64,000 bases of DNA from positions 164,500 to 228,499 of the IMG/VR virus record IMGVR_UViG_3300046810_000338, one strand, 5' to 3'. Shown one piece after another: positions 35,719 to 61,492 of the stretch (its first letter is position 1; every line of letters starts with the position of its first letter). The translations under genes were made by a program, and so were the position numbers. Under the pieces are notes generated by a model, which saw only the letters and a program-made list of their open reading frames with translations, was not told where the DNA came from and made no database searches.

Positions 35719-35727
35719 GATCATAAC

Positions 35728-35757
35728 GCCCTCTCCTACCTTCGGGTAGGAGAGGGC
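35728..35757 (+). terminator. Stem-loop with UUCG tetraloop
   Basis: GCCCTCTCCTACC-TTCG-GGTAGGAGAGGGC. Confidence 0.75.
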
Positions 35758-35796
35758 TATCTCTTATGCTTTCTTTTTTGTTTCCATGGGCATAAA

Positions 35797-39888: not shown

Positions 39889-42568
39889 TACGTACCTGAT
39901 CGATCACGCCATTGCGAATGTGTGGTGTGCTCCTGGCCAGGACTTTCAGGCGGTTATCAGTCCCTTCCGGCTGACCAATTACTTGGGCGCCAGAAGTAAG
40001 TACGACGTGGAGATGGGGCAGGAGATTCCTTTACCGGATGACACGACCGTATTCCACCTCTTCCAGATTGGTAATCTCCATCCTGGATTCATCGGCATCT
40101 TCCCTAAAGCAGGGACCTGGATTCGTGCAAGCGACCACTGCAATGTCATGGGTATGCTCATCGACATCTATGGCCGCACTGGGGTGCATCTGCCCCGCAT
40201 CGAAACCTGGATTGTTGTACTGCCTAATCGCAACATGTTGGTTGCGATTGCAGATCAGGGCGATAAGTTTGATCTGTCGGCGGAACAGGTCTTTCTGCGC
40301 TTCTACTCCAATGCTTTCTTTGAGAGTGATCGCAGTGACGCAGCCCAAGAAATCCCGTACCAAACCATCCTGGACAACCCGGCTAATGATTGGGCTAACC
40401 TGGGTGGCATACGCGGCGCTGGTCGTGGTGGTGATGTCATTGTTGAGGGTGTGCGTCTTAAGCGTCGTAATGAGCTGATGCTGTTGGATGCCCGCGTTAC
40501 GGTCATGCGTAACTTGGGCTTTGGCGCTGTCAAGTGCTACTACAACGGCATTATGGTTCCAGACTTCTCAGGAGCCTATTACAGCTCGGCGGTGTTTAAG
40601 GAAGGGGATTGGGCAGAGTTCGTCATGGATGCGTCCATGCGTGAGGTGGTGCAGTTTAAGATGGTTGATCTGCCTACCTTCGACTCTACCCTGGACGGCT
40701 CTCGAAAATACTTGCTTCACCGACCAGAAGCGTTCATTGAATCGATTCAGTTCAAGGACGATTTGGATATTTATCTGTCTCGCCCTCTGGACAATGGTCG
40801 CTGGGAAGCGATCAACTACTACCAGCACTCTGAGAACGCCATGCGAATGGTGACCCATCAAGACTGGTCGATTCCTGTGCCGTTTGTGGTGGGCTACAAG
40901 GACGGGGTAACGGGTTTCAGTAACCCAATGGAGTGGACCGTTCAGGTGCACGTACGAGAAGCTGGGTTCCTGCGTCCTCTGATCAATGAGACCAGTCGGA
41001 TTAAAGAGCTGTACAAGCTCCCTCCTGCTGATCGTAGCCTCGCTATGCTGGGTATCAACTCTACCCTGCCGTTCTGGCGAGCACCTGCATTGGAAGCGGC
41101 GGTATATCCTGAGCTGATGCGTCGGTTCTCGGGCAACTTCACGGTAGCAGAAGTGGAACAAGCTTATGGCTACAATGCCATCAGTAAGTTGCTGGCAGAT
41201 AGCCCCATTCCTACCACCCTGGAGTTGGGTAACCCTGTCGCCGTGCTGCCCGTTGGGCTGCAAGCCGACGCGACTGTCTACGAGTACGATGTCGATGGTC
41301 TGTTGTTGGGTTGGAGCCAGACACATGGCACCACCCACTACAGTTGCCGCAACACGAATTGTGCGTTTGTAGAAGGACGCATTGGACTGGGGGGCAGTAA
41401 GCTCTCTACCACGTTCGGTACGGCTCCTCTGACCATGAACCCCGACGTTGACTACTTCTTCATGAAGGTGCCAACTTGGGGCGGGGTAATCAACGGCTCG
41501 TTTACGCCTGCCGTGCTGGGAACTGACTACGTCATTACCAATGGCGTGGCTCACTGGAACCTGGACCCCAAGGCGTGGCTCTGCGTAGTGCGGGACAACT
41601 CACAGTTCCTGTCGTACACGATCCAGCTGGATGCAACGGATGGGTTGATGATCTTCAGTGTTCAGTCTGAGGAAGTCGATCCGAGTGAACCTGCTAACCG
41701 CGTTGAACAAGTGCCCTACGGCAAGATTACGCTGTGGCTGAATCGCCGTACGTTGATCGAGAACATCGACTACGTGGTGCGCTGGCCTCAGGTTGTGATC
41801 TGCAACAAGGAATTCATCAGCACCGATCCTCTGCAACGTGTGGACATTCGTTGTGTGGGTCTGCCGTTTGTGGACGACACAGGCGAGTTTGTACGTGAGT
41901 TGCCGCTGGACACTGGGTTTGTGGAATACGGGCAGTTGAGCCACAACAACCATTACAACGTGCGGGACGATAAGGTCCAGCGTATTGTGGTGCGTGGTCG
42001 AGTGCGCCAACCCTCGGACATTTCCTATCCTGAGAATGGCGTGGGGGCATCTGTAGCGGGCGTCGTTAACGGCGATCCGTACAGCGTAGAAGAAGTGATT
42101 GTGCCTGTGGATCGTTTTACCACCGACACGACGACCAACCTGCGAGCCGCTGCAATGGAACGGGATCGGTTGATCGAGAACTACATGGATCAGTTTGTCC
42201 ATGAGCCTACCGAGCCTAACCCCAACCCTATTCCTGCGCGTTACGACGTGTTCAGTCCGTTCTTGGCCAAGATCATTCGTGATCTGCAACACGGCTACTT
42301 GTCCATCAAGGCTGCTGACATGCCTTTGACTGACAACAAAACCAAGACGATGTTGGCCGATTATGTCTACCTGTTGGAGTATGACCCGTATCGGCTTAGC
42401 CTGCCGCCCGACTACGTGACCATCCACCCCCATGACAGCTACACCGCTATCACCTTGGGTGTGTATGAGTTCTACCTGGTTCAGAAGGCCGTCAAGCTGT
42501 ACTTCGCAGACTCTATCGACACCAGTTTGCTGCTCGGTGTTGAAGAGGGTTGGGTACCTATTTCCTAG
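39881..42568 (+). CDS. Virion structural (baseplate-region) protein (phiKZ gp27-like)
   Basis: GGAG RBS; ATG at 39881 (MPSTYLIDHAIANVWCAPGQD); synteny. Confidence 0.7.
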   Translation: MPSTYLIDHAIANVWCAPGQDFQAVISPFRLTNYLGARSKYDVEMGQEIPLPDDTTVFHLFQIGNLHPGFIGIFPKAGTWIRASDHCNVMGMLIDIYGRTGVHLPRIETWIVVLPNRNMLVAIADQGDKFDLSAEQVFLRFYSNAFFESDRSDAAQEIPYQTILDNPANDWANLGGIRGAGRGGDVIVEGVRLKRRNELMLLDARVTVMRNLGFGAVKCYYNGIMVPDFSGAYYSSAVFKEGDWAEFVMDASMREVVQFKMVDLPTFDSTLDGSRKYLLHRPEAFIESIQFKDDLDIYLSRPLDNGRWEAINYYQHSENAMRMVTHQDWSIPVPFVVGYKDGVTGFSNPMEWTVQVHVREAGFLRPLINETSRIKELYKLPPADRSLAMLGINSTLPFWRAPALEAAVYPELMRRFSGNFTVAEVEQAYGYNAISKLLADSPIPTTLELGNPVAVLPVGLQADATVYEYDVDGLLLGWSQTHGTTHYSCRNTNCAFVEGRIGLGGSKLSTTFGTAPLTMNPDVDYFFMKVPTWGGVINGSFTPAVLGTDYVITNGVAHWNLDPKAWLCVVRDNSQFLSYTIQLDATDGLMIFSVQSEEVDPSEPANRVEQVPYGKITLWLNRRTLIENIDYVVRWPQVVICNKEFISTDPLQRVDIRCVGLPFVDDTGEFVRELPLDTGFVEYGQLSHNNHYNVRDDKVQRIVVRGRVRQPSDISYPENGVGASVAGVVNGDPYSVEEVIVPVDRFTTDTTTNLRAAAMERDRLIENYMDQFVHEPTEPNPNPIPARYDVFSPFLAKIIRDLQHGYLSIKAADMPLTDNKTKTMLADYVYLLEYDPYRLSLPPDYVTIHPHDSYTAITLGVYEFYLVQKAVKLYFADSIDTSLLLGVEEGWVPIS

Positions 42569-55320: not shown

Positions 55321-55614
55321 ATGCAACAGCAGTTTAAAGTATTGGAAAGCAGTCTGCGGACTGTGCTGGATGAGGCACCTGCTTTGCTTCATCACGAAGA
55401 GCTGAGCCCTTGTTTGAAGATGGCGTTGCTGAACAGCCTTCGTAACGACTTGGCAGATTTGCTCAATCGTATTGCCAATCTGTCTGGGCAGTCGCCAGAG
55501 ACTCACACCAACATTTTCCGAGAGGCCAGTCGCTTCTGTTTGCAAGTGAGCGACCTGAATAAGCCATCGCAGGGTATGTGGAGAATGGAACATGGCGGTT
55601 ATGGTGGCTTCTAA
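55321..55614 (+). CDS. Hypothetical protein
   Basis: AAGGAG RBS; ATG at 55321. Confidence 0.65.
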   Translation: MQQQFKVLESSLRTVLDEAPALLHHEELSPCLKMALLNSLRNDLADLLNRIANLSGQSPETHTNIFREASRFCLQVSDLNKPSQGMWRMEHGGYGGF

Positions 55615-55873
55615 GTCCTGGGTTGATCCAGCCTTTGCCAGGCTGCAAATGATGAGCCTGGTTGTTCAGGCTCAGTATCTTCACCGAGCATTGTCGGGCA
55701 AGCCCACCTTGCTCAACCTGATGCTCGACAACATCAAGCAGGAATCGGACCACTGGGTTCGGTTCCTGCCTAAAATGGACCATCCGGTCTACGTGATTGC
55801 AACGCCGTTCGATCCCAATCGGGAACGATCGGTGGATGAATTCCCAATTGAATTTAAGGAGTTAGTACCATGA
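55592..55873 (+). CDS. Hypothetical protein
   Basis: 93 aa; overlap-packed. Confidence 0.6.
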   Translation: MAVMVASKSWVDPAFARLQMMSLVVQAQYLHRALSGKPTLLNLMLDNIKQESDHWVRFLPKMDHPVYVIATPFDPNRERSVDEFPIEFKELVP

Positions 55874-56244
55874 CCATGATGAACATTTTTACCCGAGGAG
55901 CGCGCACCATGCCAACTGAAGAAGAGTACCACCCAATCCTGTTCGTGCGTAACGAAAAGGATGAGCACGTCCCAGTGGACAACAATCCCCTGTGGATTGC
56001 CAAGCTGGGTCAGGTCATTGACCGTGGGGAATCCTTTGCCGACCTGATCGGCCCACTGCTGGTCCGTCGCGGGTGCGAAGGAGACTGGCATTATTACCCA
56101 GCTCCATTTCTGTTCAAGTCTCCTGAAGAACGCCGGGTTGCAGCCACTCGCCGTGGCAAGAACCCACCCGCAGAGCCATGGGTCCGCCGTAAGCTGGCCC
56201 TGCTCTATCGACTGGCTCGCCGTGAATATAAACTGGTGGCCTAA
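55870..56244 (+). CDS. Hypothetical protein
   Basis: AAGGAG RBS; ATGA overlap. Confidence 0.65.
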   Translation: MTMMNIFTRGARTMPTEEEYHPILFVRNEKDEHVPVDNNPLWIAKLGQVIDRGESFADLIGPLLVRRGCEGDWHYYPAPFLFKSPEERRVAATRRGKNPPAEPWVRRKLALLYRLARREYKLVA

Positions 56245-56307
56245 ATATAACAGGAGTATTTCACTCACTTACTTACTTTCAACTTTGCTGGTAGCCGAGG
56301 GGGGTAC

Positions 56308-56784
56308 ATGAAAATTGGATGTTGCGAACATGTTTCCTCCCTTGTAGCCAAAGAGGTCGGCTTACAATGGACTGGTCGGAAAATGGCCCTAAGAGACTTA
56401 GGGCCAACTGATCGGGTAACAGGTTTATTTTTTGTCTCCACGTACATTGACTTGTCCTTGGATGAGTACATTTATTTGATTGACCATCTTTCTCTGTTGA
56501 CGATGTTCAATGGAATACGATGCAAGATCCCCGCGTTCCATTTCAACTCTGCCATGGTCAGCTATTTGGAGCATGCCGGACATCGGTATTGGTACATCGC
56601 TGTCAATGGAGAACTGGTGAGAATAAGAGAGATGACCATGACCAAGCTGTCCAATCGATTGAACATCAACCTCGATGAAGACATCCGTCATTGCTTTGAT
56701 CAGCTCTTCATTCACTCCCCAGTAGAAGCCCGTCAAACTTACATGCCTCAACGTGGTAAAACACCTCGATTGAAATGGTCGTAA
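56308..56784 (+). CDS. Hypothetical protein
   Basis: 158 aa; GAGGGG RBS. Confidence 0.65.
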   Translation: MKIGCCEHVSSLVAKEVGLQWTGRKMALRDLGPTDRVTGLFFVSTYIDLSLDEYIYLIDHLSLLTMFNGIRCKIPAFHFNSAMVSYLEHAGHRYWYIAVNGELVRIREMTMTKLSNRLNINLDEDIRHCFDQLFIHSPVEARQTYMPQRGKTPRLKWS

Positions 56785-56789
56785 TACTC

Positions 56790-56830
56790 TGCCTGTACAG
56801 CCGCTACTGCGGCTGTACAGGCATTATGCC
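56790..56830 (+). terminator. Perfect 15-bp stem-loop followed by TTATGCC
   Basis: TGCCTGTACAGCCGC-TACT-GCGGCTGTACAGGCA. Confidence 0.7.
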
Positions 56831-56894
56831 ACCTATTTTCTTTTTGTTACTGTATGACACACGACTACCTTTTCTTGTCTACGAGTGTATTCTA

Positions 56895-57278
56895 ATGCAG
56901 TTAGAAAATAGAATTGAGCGTACACACGAACTGAAAAACATGTTGAGTGGCCCAGGACCTGCTGTCGTCCAACACTGGGAAGACTACCGCAAGTTTGAAG
57001 CCATGATGGGTGGCGACCATGAGGTTGCACTTTTCTTTGCTGAGCAAGATGTAAAGCGCGAAATCAGCAATGGGAAGTTCAATACCCCGGTTGCACAATC
57101 CGATCTGGATCTGTTCGTGATCAGGGCCCCAACCATTTTACGGTGGTTGGATAAAGACATTTCCGCTGTCATTGAAGTAGGAGGGAATGACGCCATTGTA
57201 TACCTGAAAACTTTATCTGATCTGCGCCAGATTCTTACCCGGACACTGGAGCACTATCAGAGGATCGTGGGTGTATAA
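56895..57278 (+). CDS. Hypothetical protein
   Basis: ATG at 56895 (MQLENRI); the longer ORF-track start crosses the terminator. Confidence 0.6.
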   Translation: MQLENRIERTHELKNMLSGPGPAVVQHWEDYRKFEAMMGGDHEVALFFAEQDVKREISNGKFNTPVAQSDLDLFVIRAPTILRWLDKDISAVIEVGGNDAIVYLKTLSDLRQILTRTLEHYQRIVGV

Positions 57279-57728
57279 ATGACCGTCGAAGTTGTTTACC
57301 GCAACTTGTTTGATTCAACCGAAGACGCCATCGTCATCACAGTCAACTGTGGTGGCATCATGGGTAAAGGTGTGGCTGAAGGTTTCAAGCATCGATACCC
57401 GTTATGCTTCTTCGATTACAACCGACGCTGTAAAGGGGCTCTGGTTAAACCAGGGAGAATCACGTTGAAGGACGTGTACCGCTTGCCTAACGGTAAGTAC
57501 GCGATTCTATTCCCTACCAAATCCACCTGGAGAAGGAACTCTGATATTGAATGGATTAAAAGTGGACTAAAAGACTTATGCGACATTGTCTTGCATCTAG
57601 GTCTGGACTCCATTGCCATGCCTCCACCGGGTTGCGGTAATGGCGGTCTGGATTGGGATAAAGAAGTTGGGCCATTAGTCCACGAATGGTGGGATGGTTC
57701 TGAGGTAGAAGTCGTGGTGTGCAGGTAG
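57279..57728 (+). CDS. Macro domain ADP-ribosylhydrolase (DarG-like)
   Basis: VITVNCGGIMGKGVA.GFK.RYP, FPTK..WR..S, SIAMPPPGCGNGGLDW. Confidence 0.88.
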   Translation: MTVEVVYRNLFDSTEDAIVITVNCGGIMGKGVAEGFKHRYPLCFFDYNRRCKGALVKPGRITLKDVYRLPNGKYAILFPTKSTWRRNSDIEWIKSGLKDLCDIVLHLGLDSIAMPPPGCGNGGLDWDKEVGPLVHEWWDGSEVEVVVCR

Positions 57729-57741
57729 ACATTATATGTGC

Positions 57742-57959
57742 GCGTTGCTGCGACGCTGGTCCTCACCTTAAGGAGTCGGGCGCTGAGACTGAATTGGTCC
57801 TTTGCCTGGCATTAAGGTACGGTGGCTTGGGGTTTCCCGTCCTTTCCTCTAAGCCACAAGTTGTAGAGTGTGGACGCGTTCTGCCTGACGCGTTTGACTA
57901 TGCAGCCTACTGATCGCCAGATTCTCCTGTGGGTGGTCAGTGGGGTGCCGTGACAACGT
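57742..57959 (+). ncRNA. Candidate structured non-coding RNA (~220 nt), family unknown
   Basis: The 5' and 3' ends pair through four nested helices, with at least two internal hairpins. TATG lies immediately upstream and a terminator-like hairpin immediately downstream. Many G-U pairs favour the + strand. Confidence 0.6.
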
Positions 57960-57961
57960 AA

Positions 57962-57995
57962 TGGTCCGTCCCTTAGGGGGCGGGCCACTATGCCG
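57962..57995 (+). terminator. Stem-loop followed by CTATGCCG
   Basis: TGGTCCGTCCC-TTAG-GGGGCGGGCCA. Confidence 0.6.
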
Positions 57996-58033
57996 TAATT
58001 GTATAAGACCCCCAACCTATTAGGAGCTTTACC

Positions 58034-58519
58034 ATGGGTATTCGTACCATTGCACAGATCATCGCCCAGCTGACTGGCTTCGCTGCTAAGGGTGACAACA
58101 ATGACATCACCAAGCTTTCTGCACTGACCTCTCTGGTCAAGAAAGTAACGGCCACCATTATCAGCGTGGGTAGCTTGGCTGAGAAGATTCGTATCGTTAC
58201 GGCGGCAACCGGCACTGTAACCCTGGACCTGGCAACGGCCTCGACCTTCGAGTTGCAGATGACTGGTAATACGACGGTGGCATTCACCAACGTTCCCACC
58301 ACGGTAGGCGAGAGCATTGGGTTCACCATTCGCATTGTTCAACCAGCGTCACCGTTCTCGATCACCTGGCCTACCAGCATCACCAAATGGATCACCCCCA
58401 CAGGTCTGGCCCCAGACACTCCGGCGGCCAACAAGACCGGTGAGTTTATCTTTACTGCCCATGTGGCATCGATCAGCTCTGGCACTACGATCACGGGTCG
58501 TAAAGGGGCAACAAATTGA
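58034..58519 (+). CDS. Tail-fibre-related protein
   Basis: AAKGDNNDITKLSAL resembles the tail-fibre GANSDITSL repeat; TLDLATASTF...TWP.SI.W is a beta-sandwich pattern. Confidence 0.6.
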   Translation: MGIRTIAQIIAQLTGFAAKGDNNDITKLSALTSLVKKVTATIISVGSLAEKIRIVTAATGTVTLDLATASTFELQMTGNTTVAFTNVPTTVGESIGFTIRIVQPASPFSITWPTSITKWITPTGLAPDTPAANKTGEFIFTAHVASISSGTTITGRKGATN

Positions 58520-59553
58520 GCATTGCATCCAGACTGATGGGTGCCCCGTCAGACACTCAAATTATTGTCCCTCCTTTAAGCCAGTTGTTTGAAGCAAAGA
58601 CCTACTCTGGATTCGAACTACAGAGCAGTGCTGATAGAAAAGTCAGTAGCAACGTTGACCTGTTAAACAATTCTGGTTTGCGTTGGATTAAACGCCGGGG
58701 TGGCGGTGGGAACCACATTCTGATCGAAAGCAGTATGCGTGCAAATAACCTACCGTTACTGTCTACCAACACAACTGACGGACCGTTTCCAAATGGTAGC
58801 ATCTCCACAGTCGCACCCTTGGCAGACGGCTTCAGCGTTACGATAGAAGAAGATGTGGGCAGCTCCGTTGGCACCTATGTGGCATGGTCTTTTCGTGAAG
58901 CCCCCAAGTTCTTTGATGCAGTGCGTTACTCTGGCAGTGGTATAAGTCAGGTAATTCCACACAGCCTGGGCGTTGCTCCCGGCATGATCGTCACCAAGAT
59001 GATCAACGGTAGCGGGGATTGGAACGTTTACCATCGCAATAGCGGGTTAGATTCTGGTAACGGTAGCGATGGTGTTCTGACGCTAAACACAACCTCTGGC
59101 AGTCTAATTGATGATGGTCGATATTGGGGAGTCCCTGGGGAAGGACCAGTCAGCCCAGACGCCTCAAGCTTCACCGTTGGCTACGGCAACGCTCAGGGTG
59201 CTGGAGAGTATCTAGCACTGCTATTTGCCCACTCGGACGATCCTGATAGCTATGTTCGTTGTGGGTGGTTTGAGACAAACAGCGGAGGCGCTGGTCAACT
59301 CAACCTGGGGTTCAAGGCAAACTTCCTGTTGGTCAAACGCAAAGACAACGACGGTGATTGGATGATTTTTGACGGGGCTCGTGGTCTTGACACTACCAGT
59401 ACCTTCGAGTACCTGAAAGCCAACAGTCCCGATCGGAATAGCCAGACTAACGACGTTGTCATTAGTCCTGGCGACACCACCACCGATTTCTCCTATCCCG
59501 CATATGGCGCATCGCGTTACATCTACATGGCCATTCGCTTCCCTGACTCCTGA
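58516..59553 (+). CDS. Tail-fibre-associated beta-rich repeat protein
   Basis: TTG start overlapping the upstream stop. Three repeats: WIKRR...YVAWSF, IVTK...W.VYH...YLALLFA, LVKRKD..GDW...YIYMAI. Confidence 0.65.
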   Translation: MSIASRLMGAPSDTQIIVPPLSQLFEAKTYSGFELQSSADRKVSSNVDLLNNSGLRWIKRRGGGGNHILIESSMRANNLPLLSTNTTDGPFPNGSISTVAPLADGFSVTIEEDVGSSVGTYVAWSFREAPKFFDAVRYSGSGISQVIPHSLGVAPGMIVTKMINGSGDWNVYHRNSGLDSGNGSDGVLTLNTTSGSLIDDGRYWGVPGEGPVSPDASSFTVGYGNAQGAGEYLALLFAHSDDPDSYVRCGWFETNSGGAGQLNLGFKANFLLVKRKDNDGDWMIFDGARGLDTTSTFEYLKANSPDRNSQTNDVVISPGDTTTDFSYPAYGASRYIYMAIRFPDS

Positions 59554-59560
59554 GGTTACT

Positions 59561-60388
59561 ATGTCTCTCATTGTTTATATCAACACCCTCACTGGGAAGT
59601 ACCCAGTAACCGAACAAGATATTCGAGCTAACAATCCGAACGTCAGCTTCTCCCCTCCCTTCATTGCCCCAAAGCAGTATCGACAGGTCTTTGCCTCCAA
59701 GTTGCCAGACTTCAACCCACTCACCCAACGCCTGGCCGAAGCCGCTCCCGTGATCAGTCAAACGGGTACCTACGAACGCGGTTGGACAATCGTTGATCTT
59801 GATCCAGACGTGGCCCAGAAAAACCTGGCCAACCGACTGGTTAATGATACTGCTCGGCTGATTGCAGCCATCAAGATTTCTGAAACAGTGGCTGACATCA
59901 AAGACGTCTATGACTCCATCGTTGCCTCTGGGGCAACGTTGCCTGACTATGGGGTCATCCGCCCGTACGCACTGGATCGCTTGAATGCGGACTACACGAC
60001 AGCCGTTAACTTCATTCGGGCAGACTATCCAGAAGCCGAGTTGATCACCTGGACCATGCAGCGTACCGAAGCCAAAGCCTACCTGGCCTGGGAGAATGCA
60101 GGTTCTAAGGGTACTCCTCCTGATACTCCGTTCCTGGTGCAACTCAACGCGGAGCGCACGGCGATGCAAGTGGGCGATGGCATGGTCGACTTGGTGAACC
60201 GCATCATTAACAACGATGCGTTCTACACCCCGGCGATGGCCAAACTCACTGCCATGCGTCACGGCTTTGAGAAACAGCTCAATGCATTCACCACACTGGA
60301 ACAGGTGGCATCGATCGATTGGGTGTTCCCCAACCTTGTAGCAGAGGCACAGGCGGCTGCCGCTGCGGCGGCTAATCCGGCAACATAA
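59561..60388 (+). CDS. Putative tail fibre assembly-type protein
   Basis: GAGG RBS; ATG at 59561. YP...IRA.NPNVSF N-terminus and a YP..E..TW..Q..EA.AY...TPFL domain. Confidence 0.6.
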   Translation: MSLIVYINTLTGKYPVTEQDIRANNPNVSFSPPFIAPKQYRQVFASKLPDFNPLTQRLAEAAPVISQTGTYERGWTIVDLDPDVAQKNLANRLVNDTARLIAAIKISETVADIKDVYDSIVASGATLPDYGVIRPYALDRLNADYTTAVNFIRADYPEAELITWTMQRTEAKAYLAWENAGSKGTPPDTPFLVQLNAERTAMQVGDGMVDLVNRIINNDAFYTPAMAKLTAMRHGFEKQLNAFTTLEQVASIDWVFPNLVAEAQAAAAAAANPAT

Positions 60389-60393
60389 GTGCA

Positions 60394-60430
60394 CCCTCCT
60401 TCCCTTTAGGGGGAAGGAGGGCTTATGCCG
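60394..60430. terminator. Stem-loop between convergent genes, flanked by CATA/TATGCC
   Basis: CCCTCCTTCCC/GGGAAGGAGGG. Confidence 0.7.
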
Positions 60431-61492
60431 TTATGAGCAACGCAGACGAATCTTGAGCTTATCCATGTCGGCCTTTGTCAAAGACAAACCAGCAACGTTT
60501 TTATCCGTTGAAGTCAGGCGCTGAAAAGTACCCATTGCACCCGTCATCGTTTTCGACCACGGTTTGAAGACCGTACCATCCTCAGAGAAGCTGGTCGTTG
60601 CCGTCATGGTCATGCCATTAACCGCTTTCAACCGACCCTTGGCCAACACCCCGACCACTTTGGCACTGGTCAGACTGGGGGCAGTGTAACCCACATCCAA
60701 CGTGGCCAGCTGAGCAGGCCCGCTAACAACAGGCGTGTCGATATCCGACGTACCCGTGATGGCGGTTTTCAACACCGAGTCCACTGTGCCGGTAGACGGG
60801 GTCAGGTTAGTGGCAGTGGTGGTCGCTACCGCCATGGGTGCCACCGTAATGTTGCCAGGAGGCATCAGGGTTTCCCCAGACTCGTACTCAATCCAATAAA
60901 GGTCTTTAAAGCACCATTCATAGGTCAAGTTGAGGGTTGAGGTGCGCTCGCCGTAGCCACCCATGTCTTGGTAGATAGCCGCGTTGTTGGCAACCGCGGT
61001 TGTCATCCAGGCAGGGATTGGCGTAACCGCAAGCTTTACCCCATTGACCCAACGATCGATGATTCCGTTGGGGAAGTCCAGCTTCCACGTACACCAGTAT
61101 TCAACGCCTGCTGCCAAACCAGGCAGGTCGGTGGACGAGAAGAGCTGAAGTCGGTTGACCACGTTGTCGTTGATGAAGCCCATCACCGAATCAAACCAAG
61201 ACCCAGTAGTGTTCTTCACACGAAACCCACTGTAGATGGTTCTGCCAGCCGTCAGTTGTCCAACCAGATTAGCCAGGGTGTTGTACAGCGTGATGTATGC
61301 AACGTCTGCCCCGGCAGTGCGCTTGTTGGTCAAGTGCAGGTAGCCGTTGGCATCTACCGAAGTGCCGGCTACCTGGTTACCGGAGTAGGCGTTGTCGTTT
61401 CGACGAACCCACCCAGTACCAGGCAGAGTAGTGGCCGCAGTCAGCGTGGCTGGAACCGGATAGGCCCAACCGTAGGCATCATGAATGATCAT
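60431..61492 (-). CDS. Virion structural / tail-fibre-associated beta-rich protein (family A)
   Basis: 353 aa, Thr-rich; resembles 62095..63177. Confidence 0.6.
   Translation of the reverse strand: MIIHDAYGWAYPVPATLTAATTLPGTGWVRRNDNAYSGNQVAGTSVDANGYLHLTNKRTAGADVAYITLYNTLANLVGQLTAGRTIYSGFRVKNTTGSWFDSVMGFINDNVVNRLQLFSSTDLPGLAAGVEYWCTWKLDFPNGIIDRWVNGVKLAVTPIPAWMTTAVANNAAIYQDMGGYGERTSTLNLTYEWCFKDLYWIEYESGETLMPPGNITVAPMAVATTTATNLTPSTGTVDSVLKTAITGTSDIDTPVVSGPAQLATLDVGYTAPSLTSAKVVGVLAKGRLKAVNGMTMTATTSFSEDGTVFKPWSKTMTGAMGTFQRLTSTDKNVAGLSLTKADMDKLKIRLRCS

What the first reader, a model, noticed from the sequence alone, without database searches (positions are those of the whole stretch)
57735..57995. 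Unannotated ~220-nt multi-branched ncRNA with its own start motif and terminator
Seen: this is a ~300-nt gap in otherwise gene-dense sequence, and its ends close into a long imperfect rod. 57742-57756 pairs with 57945-57959 (13 of 15 pairs), 57757-57766 with 57929-57939, AGGAG 57771-57775 with CTCCT 57924-57928, and GGCG 57779-57782 with CGCC 57915-57918. Internal hairpins are GTGGCTTGGGG/CTCTAAGCCAC (57822-57857, loop TTTCCCGTCCTTTC) and GGACGCGTT/GACGCGTTT (57872-57895, loop CTGCCT), plus smaller possible stems near 57787-57819. TATG (the established phiKZ late-promoter motif) sits at 57735-57738 and a GC hairpin follows at 57962. I see no tRNA, tmRNA, RNase P or hammerhead hallmarks. Inference: a stand-alone phage RNA, such as an sRNA, protein sponge, 6S-like decoy or anti-defence RNA.
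Basis: partly seen in the sequence, partly recalled or inferred. Interest (0 to 1): 0.75.

Follow-up and report, generated by a model that had tools for sequence, protein, structure and literature searches.

The report
Conserved structured RNA of jumbo phages
The gap holds a real, evolutionarily conserved, about 250-nt folded non-coding RNA of uncultivated phiKZ-like giant phages; it matches no known RNA family, its function is unknown, and its core recurs inside a tRNA operon of an apparently unrelated large phage.

Summary
Window 57729-58033 is non-coding. It lies between a DarG-type macrodomain gene and a tail-fibre-like gene in a 228-kb phiKZ-like jumbo phage.

Eight related lineages carry the same 270-300-nt element, which begins at or within about 10 nt of the macrodomain stop codon. 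Five local helices (P2, P3, P5, P6, P7) and a 3' hairpin (P8) are conserved.

For the P5-P6-P7 core, 96.9% of cells pair and 21 of 37 pairs change on both sides. None of 500 shuffles reaches this.

Folding energy alone is weak evidence: it sits at about the 10th percentile of this genome's own background.

P8 is one of 94 "hairpin + TTATGC" modules in the genome, probably a terminator followed by a phiKZ-type start. No reading frame is conserved. Rfam, tRNA and tmRNA searches find nothing.

The invariant core junction also occurs in another large phage. There it lies between a hammerhead ribozyme and a tRNA array, with no macrodomain gene on the contig.

Best reading: a stand-alone, stable, trans-acting RNA whose partner is unknown. 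This is a new RNA family.

The parts
57279..57728 (+). Flanking gene: stand-alone DarG-type macrodomain protein (149 aa). The RNA begins at or within about 10 nt of its stop codon in all eight lineages.
   Evidence: Pfam Macro 2.7e-14. NCBIfam DarG NF048014 4e-46, macrodomain part only and below the cut-off. More distant homologues sit next to DarT in bacteria.
57735..57738 (+). TATG, candidate phiKZ-type late start (T-3 A T G+1). Putative RNA 5' end at G57738.
   Evidence: Sequence. The motif definition comes from PMC7598289. A TATG lies 2 nt (window, L006) or 8 nt (the other six lineages) upstream of the invariant block. Function not shown.
57741..57752 (+). Invariant 12-mer CGCGUUGCUGCG. 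It is either a 4-bp mini-hairpin or the 5' strand of a long-range pairing.
   Evidence: Identical in all sequences. It never varies, so covariation cannot decide between the two.
57760..57774 (+). P2 hairpin (57760-65 with 57769-74).
   Evidence: RNAalifold pairs 35-40:44-49. It is mostly conserved, with one compensatory change.
57775..57810 (+). P3 two-tier hairpin (outer 57775-82 with 57803-10; inner 57787-90 with 57796-99).
   Evidence: There are several both-sided changes, for example four sequences at pair 65:79.
57822..57857 (+). P5 hairpin (57822-32 with 57847-57). The loop holds GUCCUU, which is invariant in the jumbo clade.
Evidence: Helices 1-2: 100% paired, 4 of 7 pairs with both-sided changes.
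57858..57906 (+). AA linker plus P6 (57860-80 with 57887-906). The invariant base is GUUGU/GCAGC, with two U.G pairs.
Evidence: Helix 3: 18 pairs, 10 with both-sided changes, 94.8% paired.
57907..57943 (+). P7 (57907-18 with 57932-43), abutting P6 with no linker. The invariant base is CUAC/GUGG, with one U.G pair.
   Evidence: Helix 4: 12 pairs, 7 with both-sided changes, 98.1% paired.
57944..57962 (+). Variable linker after P7. It may pair with 57742-56 or with GGUAC at 57816-20 to close the junction.
   Evidence: Length and sequence vary between lineages. The candidate pairings are mutually exclusive and unresolved.
57963..57986 (+). P8, a 10-bp GC hairpin (57963-72 with 57977-86). Probable 3' end or terminator of the RNA.
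   Evidence: It covaries (pairs 301-306:321-326). It is one of 94 strong hairpins that precede a TATG in this genome.
57989..57992 (+). TATG within ACTATGCC, directly after P8. It is invariant in all lineages. Probable start for the downstream late gene (ATG 58034, AGGAG 58022-26).
   Evidence: TATGC invariant. Genome-wide consensus yT-TATG-C-Y. TATG is the 4-mer most often preceded by a strong hairpin, 12.3% against 1.46%.
58034..58519 (+). Flanking gene: tail-fibre-like protein (161 aa). It is not conserved in the relatives, which carry DUF7941 genes instead.
   Evidence: phrog_9017. No tblastn match in the related loci. Gene tables.

Best explanation
The gap encodes a discrete structured non-coding RNA of about 250 nt, roughly 57738-57986 on the + strand. 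It belongs to a new family found in a clade of uncultivated phiKZ-like jumbo phages.

Shown:
- It folds into local helices P2, P3, P5, P6 and P7, followed by a GC hairpin P8.
- The selected part is the P5-P6-P7 core. Three hairpins of variable sequence and length are joined by invariant nucleotides: CAA, then GUUGU...GCAGC, then directly CUAC...GUGG. These form two abutting helices rich in U.G pairs.
- The same core occurs in a different large phage. There it lies in a tRNA operon immediately after a hammerhead ribozyme.

Inferred:
- The RNA is the last element of the conserved unit '127-aa gene, DarG-type macrodomain, RNA'.
- It is made either from the TATG at 57735-38 or by read-through from the hairpin+TATG module near 56790-56830.
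- It ends at P8, a standard hairpin+TTATGC module whose TATG restarts transcription for the next gene.
- It then acts in trans as a stable RNA that presents the invariant junction to a partner. The partner is more likely a host factor or the RNA's own fold than a clade-specific phage protein. This would make it an RNP scaffold or decoy. A role in counter-defence is possible but untested.
For: Conservation:
- Macrodomain homologues at 52-60% amino-acid identity on 217-232-kb contigs all carry the element, beginning at or just after the stop codon.
- Long invariant blocks stand beside variable hairpins.

Structure:
- RNAalifold predicts 71 pairs, 28 of them with compensatory changes.
- In the core, 96.9% of cells pair and 21 of 37 pairs change on both sides. 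Zero of 500 shuffles reach this, and slid controls give 3-7 such pairs.
- Invariant U.G pairs and strand-specific folding place it on the + strand.

Not coding: no frame is open across lineages, and most indels are not multiples of three.

Autonomy:
- L037 and L038 match the core model at 36.6 bits, E about 1e-6. All three hairpins are rebuilt from different sequence.
- 26 other pattern hits score nothing with the model.
- In L037 the order is HNH gene, tRNA-Pro 3' fragment, hammerhead core, RNA, then five tRNAs.
- Those two contigs have no macrodomain gene and none of the neighbouring proteins.
- In L019 the next gene is convergent, so the RNA is not a leader there.

3' end: P8 is one of 94 hairpin+TATG modules.
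Against: - There is no expression data. No RNA run could be listed, so the 5' end, the 3' end and the stability of the RNA are all inferred.
- In the jumbo clade the element always follows the same gene, which also fits a cis-acting 3' UTR.
- All eight lineages share gene order by descent, so the linkage is not independent evidence either way.
- The L037/L038 homologue was found with a pattern made of the invariant blocks, so its E-value is inflated by selection. It represents one lineage only, on contigs that are 24-35% complete.
- Its similarity is limited to the core. The 5' domain does not align.
- No partner, ligand or target is identified.
- Folding energy is unremarkable against the genome background.
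Confidence: 0.6

Rival explanations
1. It is a cis-acting 3' UTR of the '127-aa gene plus macrodomain' operon. In this reading it is a structured 3' end that stabilises the mRNA or tunes its decay or termination, and it has no role of its own.
For: - The element begins at or just after the macrodomain stop codon in all eight lineages.
- A hairpin+TATG module lies upstream of the two-gene unit, and the next one is P8. The RNA is therefore inside that transcription unit.
- A jumbo phage whose macrodomain protein is 39% identical and lacks the 127-aa gene also lacks the RNA.
Against: - The core recurs with no macrodomain gene on the contig, in a tRNA operon behind a hammerhead ribozyme.
- Five covarying helices with an invariant junction are far more than 3'-end protection needs. 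P8 alone does that job at about 94 other sites.
- A TATG is kept just upstream in every lineage.
Confidence: 0.2
2. It is a 5' leader, riboswitch or conditional terminator for the downstream tail-fibre gene. This would resemble the short terminator-bounded RNAs found in 5' UTRs of phiKZ and 201phi2-1.
For: - It lies upstream of a late structural gene and ends in a hairpin.
- phiKZ-type phages make many 5'-UTR-derived short RNAs by premature termination (PMC10914365; PMC11512511).
Against: - In L019 the next gene is convergent, yet the RNA is intact.
- The downstream genes are not homologous between the window and its relatives.
- An invariant TATG follows P8 and can serve the downstream gene by itself.
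- In L037 the element is followed by tRNAs.
Confidence: 0.07
3. It is a counter-defence decoy or sponge RNA. This is a sub-case of the best explanation: the RNA titrates or misleads a host immune protein, as part of an anti-defence locus.
For: - It sits directly after a DarG-type macrodomain, whose cellular relatives are antitoxins of the DarTG phage-defence system.
- In the other phage it sits in a tRNA array. From general knowledge, tRNA arrays are a class of phage genes often linked to escape from tRNA-cleaving defences.
- No phage protein is shared between the two contexts.
Against: - This rests purely on guilt by association.
- From general knowledge, DarT acts on single-stranded DNA, not RNA.
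- No mimicry of a tRNA, CRISPR repeat or other known target was found.
Confidence: 0.15
4. It is a small protein-coding gene: the 64-aa ORF 57719-57913, or the 113-aa ORF called in one relative.
For: - ORF 57719-57913 exists in the window.
- A 113-aa gene was called over the region in L007, and a 58-aa one in L011.
Against: - No frame is open in all lineages. The open frame of L013 carries three stops in its close relative L018.
- 7-11 indels per pairwise comparison are not multiples of three.
- There is no Pfam or PHROG match.
- The substitutions are compensatory for RNA pairing.
Confidence: 0.01
5. It is chance folding of a spacer with no selected structure.
For: Against the genome's own background the folding z-score is only about the 10th percentile.
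Against: There are invariant blocks and 21 of 37 core pairs with both-sided changes, against 3-7 in slid controls. The element is conserved where the flanking proteins are only 52-60% identical.
Confidence: 0.01

Closest known systems
Terminator-bounded short RNAs of phiKZ and 201phi2-1 (5'-UTR-derived sRNAs, e.g. upstream of phiKZ gp182, PHIKZ221 and PHIKZ302)
   Same: - Same phage group, with multisubunit phage RNA polymerases.
- Short non-coding transcripts are delimited by a start motif and a hairpin, some next to tail genes. They are conserved within genera and their function is unknown (PMC10914365, PMC11512511).
   Different: - Those RNAs are 70-200 nt leaders defined by transcriptomics. 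This one is about 250 nt, multi-branched and defined by covariation.
- It is not tied to the downstream gene (L019).
- The phiKZ gap before gp182 is only 55 nt.
- There is no sequence match to any phage record in the INPHARED/GenBank collection.
T4 small stable RNAs rnaC and rnaD (species 1 and 2), encoded in the tRNA cluster
   Same: The L037 homologue is, like them, a structured RNA of unknown function encoded within a phage tRNA array. It is presumably cut out together with the tRNAs.
   Different: - The core model finds nothing in the T4 tRNA region. The best hit is 4.6 bits, E 0.99.
- The window's own phage has no tRNA genes.
- In L037 a hammerhead ribozyme, not only RNase P, would set the 5' end.
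GOLLD and ROOL, large ornate RNAs of phages and prophages
   Same: They are phage-associated, highly structured and of unknown function. From general knowledge they are often near tRNA genes and they are covariation-supported (10.1101/2024.12.08.627333, listed).
   Different: From general knowledge those are about 600-800 nt and have Rfam models. This RNA is about 250 nt and matches no Rfam model, even at E up to 10.
6S RNA
   Same: Similar size range. Both are non-coding RNAs that could bind a polymerase.
   Different: 6S RNA is a long rod with a central bubble. Here the rod is contradicted by the conserved P2 and the covarying local hairpins P3 and P7. There is no Rfam 6S match.

Membership tests
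Any Rfam 15 family (4227 models) | Score at or above the family's gathering threshold | tested here: not met
   - There are no matches in the whole window.
- At E up to 10, only two chance fragments of 16-24 nt appear within 57600-58100.
- The relatives L007, L019, L006, L037 and L038 give only tRNAs.
tRNA / tmRNA | Cloverleaf, or tRNA-like domain with a tag reading frame, found by ARAGORN | tested here: not met
   ARAGORN finds none in the window and none in the whole 228-kb genome.
6S RNA | Long, largely double-stranded rod closed by the 5' and 3' ends, with a central bubble | tested here: not met
Only the outermost segment remains possible.
phiKZ-type late transcription unit | TATG overlapping the start site (T-3 A T G+1; PMC7598289) | tested here: met
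   TATG lies at 57735-38. A TATG is kept 2-8 nt upstream of the invariant block in all lineages. The genome encodes a phiKZ-type RNA polymerase beta subunit.
phiKZ-type late transcription unit | Transcripts really begin at that G | not testable with these tools
   No RNA run could be listed. The single read-laying run showed only DNA contigs.
Canonical intrinsic terminator | GC-rich hairpin followed by a run of U | tested here: not met
   The hairpin is present, but the tail is ACUAUGCC and the consensus scan does not call it. It instead fits the genome's own hairpin+TTATGC module.
Riboswitch / 5' leader | Constant position upstream of, and on the same strand as, the regulated gene | tested here: not met
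   The gene after the RNA is convergent in L019, is not homologous between window and relatives, and is a tRNA in L037.
Protein-coding gene | One reading frame kept open, with indels in multiples of three | tested here: not met
T4 rnaC / rnaD | Sequence and structure similarity to the T4 stable RNAs | tested here: not met
   The core model with filters off, run on the T4 tRNA region, gives a best hit of 4.6 bits.
Hammerhead ribozyme (the element upstream of the L037 homologue, not the window) | CUGAUGA and GAAA core, three helices, cleavable UH site | tested here: inconclusive
   - All core nucleotides and helices I-III can be drawn by hand at L037 2619-2685, with the cut after 2679.
- Rfam Hammerhead_3 scores 21.9 bits, E 0.057, which is below the gathering score.
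- The stretch is similar to an unannotated stretch in phages ZC03 and ZC08.
New family defined here (three-hairpin-core RNA) | P5, then CAA, then P6 on a GUUGU/GCAGC base, then directly P7 on a CUAC/GUGG base; helices covary | tested here: met
   Model R1 scores the window at 92 bits, the other jumbo lineages at 108-149 bits and L037/L038 at 36.6 bits.

The most novel reading that the evidence does not exclude
This is a previously undescribed class of autonomous structured RNA gene, exchanged between unrelated giant phages. Its invariant, wobble-rich double-helix junction would be an active site or a specific binding site. That would make it either a new ribozyme or ligand-binding fold, or an RNA decoy or RNP that acts on a host factor (for example in counter-defence) without a dedicated phage protein.
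Probability: 0.3. Interest if true: 0.8.

Novelty: new variant of a known kind. Interest (0 to 1): 0.62.

Why it matters
- Nucleus-forming phiKZ-like phages are intensively studied, but their non-coding RNAs are barely characterised and none has a known function.
- This is a covariation-supported RNA fold of about 250 nt with an invariant junction. It is conserved while the neighbouring proteins have drifted to 52-60% identity.
- It is also present in a tRNA operon of another large phage, where a self-cleaving ribozyme appears to free it. That is the signature of an RNA that does something by itself.
- It gives a defined and testable object: about 130 nt of core with eight natural variants. 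It is suited to structure determination, pull-downs and trans-complementation.
- The work also reveals the regulatory grammar of this phage. Hairpin+TTATGC modules separate its transcription units.

Tried and rejected
- **Folding energy as proof.** Rejected after the genome background test.
- **Homology searches.**
  - Rfam at gathering and E-value thresholds and ARAGORN found nothing relevant.
  - blastn against 50,697 phage records found no match to the RNA.
  - An exact 22-mer scan of IMG/VR found none.
  - Two scans of bacterial and archaeal genomes gave no true hit.
  - A relaxed IMG/VR pattern gave 14 extra hits, all rejected by the model. They serve as a control.
- **Expression data.**
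  - No RNA run could be listed.
  - Laid contigs only showed the source assembly, plus two identical 151-nt pieces in a freshwater run. This is uninformative.
- **Comparison with described phage RNAs.**
  - The phiKZ gp182-associated sRNA is not comparable, because the gap there is only 55 nt.
  - T4 rnaC and rnaD do not match.
- **Shared promoter word.** The RNA's 5' flank is unique in the genome.
- **Closing helix.** Two mutually exclusive candidates exist: the 5' invariant block with the tail, or GGUGC with GCACC. Neither is resolved.
- **Pseudoknot.** A pairing between the P3-P5 linker and the P7 loop looked compensatory (GGCAAG:CUUGCC, and GUAAAAG:CUUUUAC in L006). It is not better than shuffled loops, p 0.2-0.9.
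- **Shared protein partner.**
  - None of three neighbouring proteins, nor the macrodomain, occurs on the L037/L038 contigs.
  - The upstream genes have no Pfam function, and the 127-aa protein got no informative Atlas match.
- **Catalogue of candidate structured RNAs in viruses and phages (PMC10690425).** It could not be checked for this motif, because no supplementary files are held.
Full report
**Setting**

The window is the last 64 kb of a 228,499-bp IMG/VR virus record from a rhizosphere metagenome. The record is estimated 82% complete and has 52% G+C. It encodes a phage multisubunit RNA polymerase beta subunit (phrog_3295, 1.3e-176). That protein is about 33% identical to those of PhiPA3, phiKZ-like Pseudomonas phages, Burkholderia phage FLC9 and Xanthomonas phage Xoo-sp14. 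The genome has no tRNA genes.

**The observation**

Positions 57729-58033 form a 305-nt gap. Upstream is a 149-aa macrodomain gene at 57279-57728 (Pfam Macro 2.7e-14). Downstream is a 161-aa tail-fibre-like gene at 58034-58519 (phrog_9017).

The + strand of 57735-57995 folds to -116.6 kcal/mol, z = -3.89 against dinucleotide shuffles. The - strand gives z = -0.27.

That number overstates the case. In 240 random 226-nt windows of this genome the mean z is -1.09 (sd 1.26), and 9% reach -3 or lower. The element without its 3' hairpin has z = -2.97. A composition-regressed scan of the whole genome ranks it 444-831 of 7610. Part of this background comes from very strong hairpins scattered through the genome, described below. 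Energy alone would not have justified the finding.

**Comparative evidence**

The macrodomain protein has homologues of 52-60% identity on contigs of 217-232 kb and on shorter ones. Every locus that extends past the gene has a gap of 314-351 nt after it. Pattern scans added IMG/VR and JGI contigs. These make eight distinct lineages:
- the window
- L006
- L019
- L021
- L007 (=L016)
- L008 (=L009, L023)
- L010 (=L011, L017)
- L013 (=L014, L015) together with its close relative L018 (=L024), counted as one lineage

The gaps align over 270-300 nt. Invariant blocks alternate with hairpins whose sequences differ. The invariant blocks are CGCGUUGCUGCG, CAAGUUGU, GCAGCCUAC, GUGGG and UAUGC.

RNAalifold predicts 71 pairs, 28 of which keep pairing through changes on both sides.

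I built a covariance model of the P5-P6-P7 core (R1: 144 positions, 37 pairs) and counted pairs on the model alignment of nine distinct sequences:
- 96.9% of cells pair, against 80.4% in shuffles.
- 21 of 37 pairs have a both-sided change, against 11.1 ± 2.0 in shuffles and 3-7 when the partner is slid by 1-3 columns.
- Zero of 500 shuffles reach any of the five measures.

Several invariant U.G pairs would be C-A on the other strand. Together, this fixes the RNA on the + strand.

No reading frame survives. Each frame has stops in some lineage. The frame that is open in L013 has three stops in its close relative L018. Seven to eleven indels per comparison are not multiples of three.

**Anatomy in window coordinates**

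These coordinates are read.

| Feature | Coordinates |
|---|---|
| TATG | 57735-38 |
| Invariant 12-mer | 57741-52 |
| P2 | 57760-65 with 57769-74 |
| P3 outer | 57775-82 with 57803-10 |
| P3 inner | 57787-90 with 57796-99 |
| P5 | 57822-32 with 57847-57 |
| AA linker | 57858-59 |
| P6 | 57860-80 with 57887-906 |
| P7 | 57907-18 with 57932-43 |
| Variable tail | 57944-62 |
| P8 | 57963-72 with 57977-86 |
| ACTATGCC | 57987-94 |

Three of its four segments take bases from P2, P3 and P7, of which P3 and P7 covary strongly and P2 is conserved with one compensatory change. The outermost segment (57742-56 with 57945-59) competes with another candidate closing helix, GGUAC-type with GUGCC or GCACC. 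Neither has convincing support.

A possible pseudoknot between the P3-P5 linker and the P7 loop looked compensatory by eye. It is no better than shuffled loops.

**The 3' hairpin is a generic signal**

In this genome 94 of 766-767 TATG sites are preceded by a hairpin of -17 kcal/mol or stronger. The consensus is yT-TATG-C-Y. Of all 256 four-letter words, TATG is the one most often preceded by such a hairpin: 12.3% against a baseline of 1.46%. Many of these sites are symmetric and so would serve both strands.

In phiKZ the only late-promoter element is T-3 A T G+1 (PMC7598289). The simplest reading is therefore 'terminator hairpin followed by the next start'. P8 plus ACTATGCC is one such module, and its TATGC is invariant in all lineages.

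Another module lies near 56790-56830. It sits just before the real start (56895) of a 127-aa gene that precedes the macrodomain gene. The RNA is therefore the last element of a unit '127-aa gene, macrodomain, RNA', and its 3' end is very probably P8.

Whether it also has its own start cannot be shown:
- TATG lies 2 nt before the invariant block in the window and in L006.
- The other six lineages have TATA at that position and a TATG six bases further upstream, inside the last macrodomain codons.
- This retention is suggestive but no more than that.
- The 5' flank is unique in the genome.

**Autonomy**

A scan of IMG/VR with the three invariant core blocks returned two further true matches, L037 and L038. 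These are 58-kb and 84-kb contigs of one other large phage, estimated 24-35% complete and carrying a topoisomerase II gene.

R1 was built without them and scores them at 36.6 bits, E about 1e-6. P5 (8 bp), P6 and P7 (14 of 14 pairs by my reading) are all rebuilt from unrelated sequence around the same junction letters. The E-value is inflated because the loci were picked by those letters. However, 14 further IMG/VR pattern hits and 12 bacterial ones score nothing, so the pattern alone does not produce a match.

The order on L037 is:
1. an HNH endonuclease gene
2. a 3' fragment of tRNA-Pro
3. a sequence with every hammerhead core nucleotide and three drawable helices, at 2619-2685, which would cut after 2679. 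Rfam Hammerhead_3 gives only 21.9 bits, E 0.057, so this rests on hand annotation.
4. the structured RNA
5. tRNA-Thr, Met, Gly, Ser and Val on the same strand

Those two contigs have no macrodomain gene, no phiKZ-type polymerase and none of the three proteins encoded upstream of the macrodomain gene in the window, as far as the fragments go.

In L019 the gene after the RNA is convergent. The downstream genes of the window and of its relatives are not homologous. A related jumbo phage whose macrodomain protein is 39% identical has only a terminator after it and no match to R1.

Together these results argue against a leader of the tail-fibre gene. They make a purely cis-acting macrodomain 3' UTR less likely than a stand-alone RNA.

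**Function**

Nothing identifies the partner.

What is selected is the junction: CAA, then helix GUUGU/GCAGC (G-C, U.G, U-A, G-C, U.G), then with no linker helix CUAC/GUGG (C-G, U.G, A-U, C-G). One continuous strand, GCAGCCUAC, pairs with two separate strands. The three hairpins vary freely in length. Conserved wobble pairs in stacked helices are typical of specific protein or metal sites and of catalytic cores. This is inference.

The macrodomain protein is of the DarG type (NCBIfam NF048014, 4e-46, covering only the macrodomain part). Its more distant homologues sit beside DarT in bacterial defence islands. The RNA therefore lies next to a likely counter-defence gene, and in the other phage it lies in a tRNA array. 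That makes an anti-defence decoy attractive, but it is guilt by association.

I commit to a stand-alone, stable, trans-acting RNA that presents this junction to a partner. The probabilities below are for separate statements, not exclusive options. The counter-defence reading is a sub-case of the stand-alone reading.

| Statement | Probability |
|---|---|
| Real conserved structured RNA | about 0.95 |
| Stand-alone and trans-acting | about 0.6 |
| Cis-acting 3' UTR | about 0.2 |
| Counter-defence role specifically | about 0.15 |
| 5' leader of the tail-fibre gene | about 0.07 |

**Comparison and novelty**

It matches no Rfam 15 family, tRNA or tmRNA. It matches no phage record in the INPHARED/GenBank collection, and the pattern scans gave no true hit in bacterial or archaeal genomes.

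In kind it resembles several known RNAs:
- the terminator-bounded short RNAs mapped in phiKZ and 201phi2-1 (PMC10914365, PMC11512511)
- the unexplained stable RNAs rnaC and rnaD of the T4 tRNA cluster, which do not match
- at a smaller scale, GOLLD and ROOL

It may be among the roughly 8,500 unnamed IMG/VR candidates of PMC10690425. I could not check this.

I rate it a new family within a known kind: orphan structured phage RNAs. There is a fair chance that the mechanism, once found, is new.

Noticed in passing
whole genome G000; examples at window 56790-56830, 57963-57994, 35720-35775, 60380-60435: A genome-wide module: a 10-15-bp GC hairpin with a tetraloop, followed at once by yTTATGCy. It accounts for 94 of about 766 TATG sites. 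TATG is the 4-mer most enriched after strong hairpins (12.3% against 1.46%). Many copies are symmetric, with GCATAA before the hairpin and TTATGC after it. It probably acts as a terminator plus a phiKZ-type late start.
   Followed up: yes
window 57279-57728: The macrodomain protein is a stand-alone DarG-type macrodomain (NCBIfam DarG, 4e-46, macrodomain part only). Homologues at 40-44% identity sit beside DarT in bacterial defence islands with type I restriction genes. It is a likely phage counter-measure to DarTG.
   Followed up: partly
L037:2578-2690 (same in L038): Directly after an HNH endonuclease gene lies a 3' fragment of tRNA-Pro (variable loop, T arm, acceptor strand, ACCA). Next comes a hand-annotated type I hammerhead at 2619-2685, with the cut after 2679. 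Rfam scores it below threshold.
   Followed up: partly
Pseudomonas phages ZC03 (KU356690.1 42209-42255) and ZC08 (42366-42412): An unannotated stretch is 83-87% identical to the hammerhead-like part of L037. This suggests the same ribozyme in cultured phages of about 70 kb.
   Followed up: no
window 55600-55880 (+): This is the strongest local fold near the finding: -118.2 kcal/mol, z = -6.81. It overlaps a 93-aa ORF (55592-55873) whose product is 37% identical to a small gene in L006. It is therefore probably a coding region with an unusually structured mRNA.
   Followed up: partly
whole genome G000: Random 226-nt windows fold better than their dinucleotide shuffles on average (mean z -1.09). 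Shuffle z-scores therefore overstate structure in this genome.
   Followed up: yes
window 57623-57773 and 57857-58007: A freshwater metagenome run (X2) holds two 151-nt contigs identical to these stretches at depth 3-4. Nothing else from 56000-59500 was laid. The tool warns that holes prove nothing, so this is unexplained.
   Followed up: partly
window 57742-57749 versus L037 about 2911-2918: The 8-mer GCGUUGCU of the invariant 5' block recurs in L037 in a small hairpin 3' of the core rather than 5' of it. This could be a permuted arrangement or chance (roughly 0.15 by my estimate).
   Followed up: no
L002 (IMGVR_UViG_3300011867_000002, 221 kb): This is a jumbo phage with a macrodomain gene at 39% identity. 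It has only a plain hairpin terminator after that gene, no 127-aa neighbour and no match to the RNA model anywhere in the record.
   Followed up: yes
window 55870-57728 and related loci: The block of 124-aa, 158-aa and 127-aa genes plus the macrodomain gene is syntenic in the related lineages whose contigs extend that far. Synteny ends exactly at the RNA, and the tail-fibre genes beyond it are different (DUF7941 in the relatives). None of the three small proteins has a recognisable function.
   Followed up: partly
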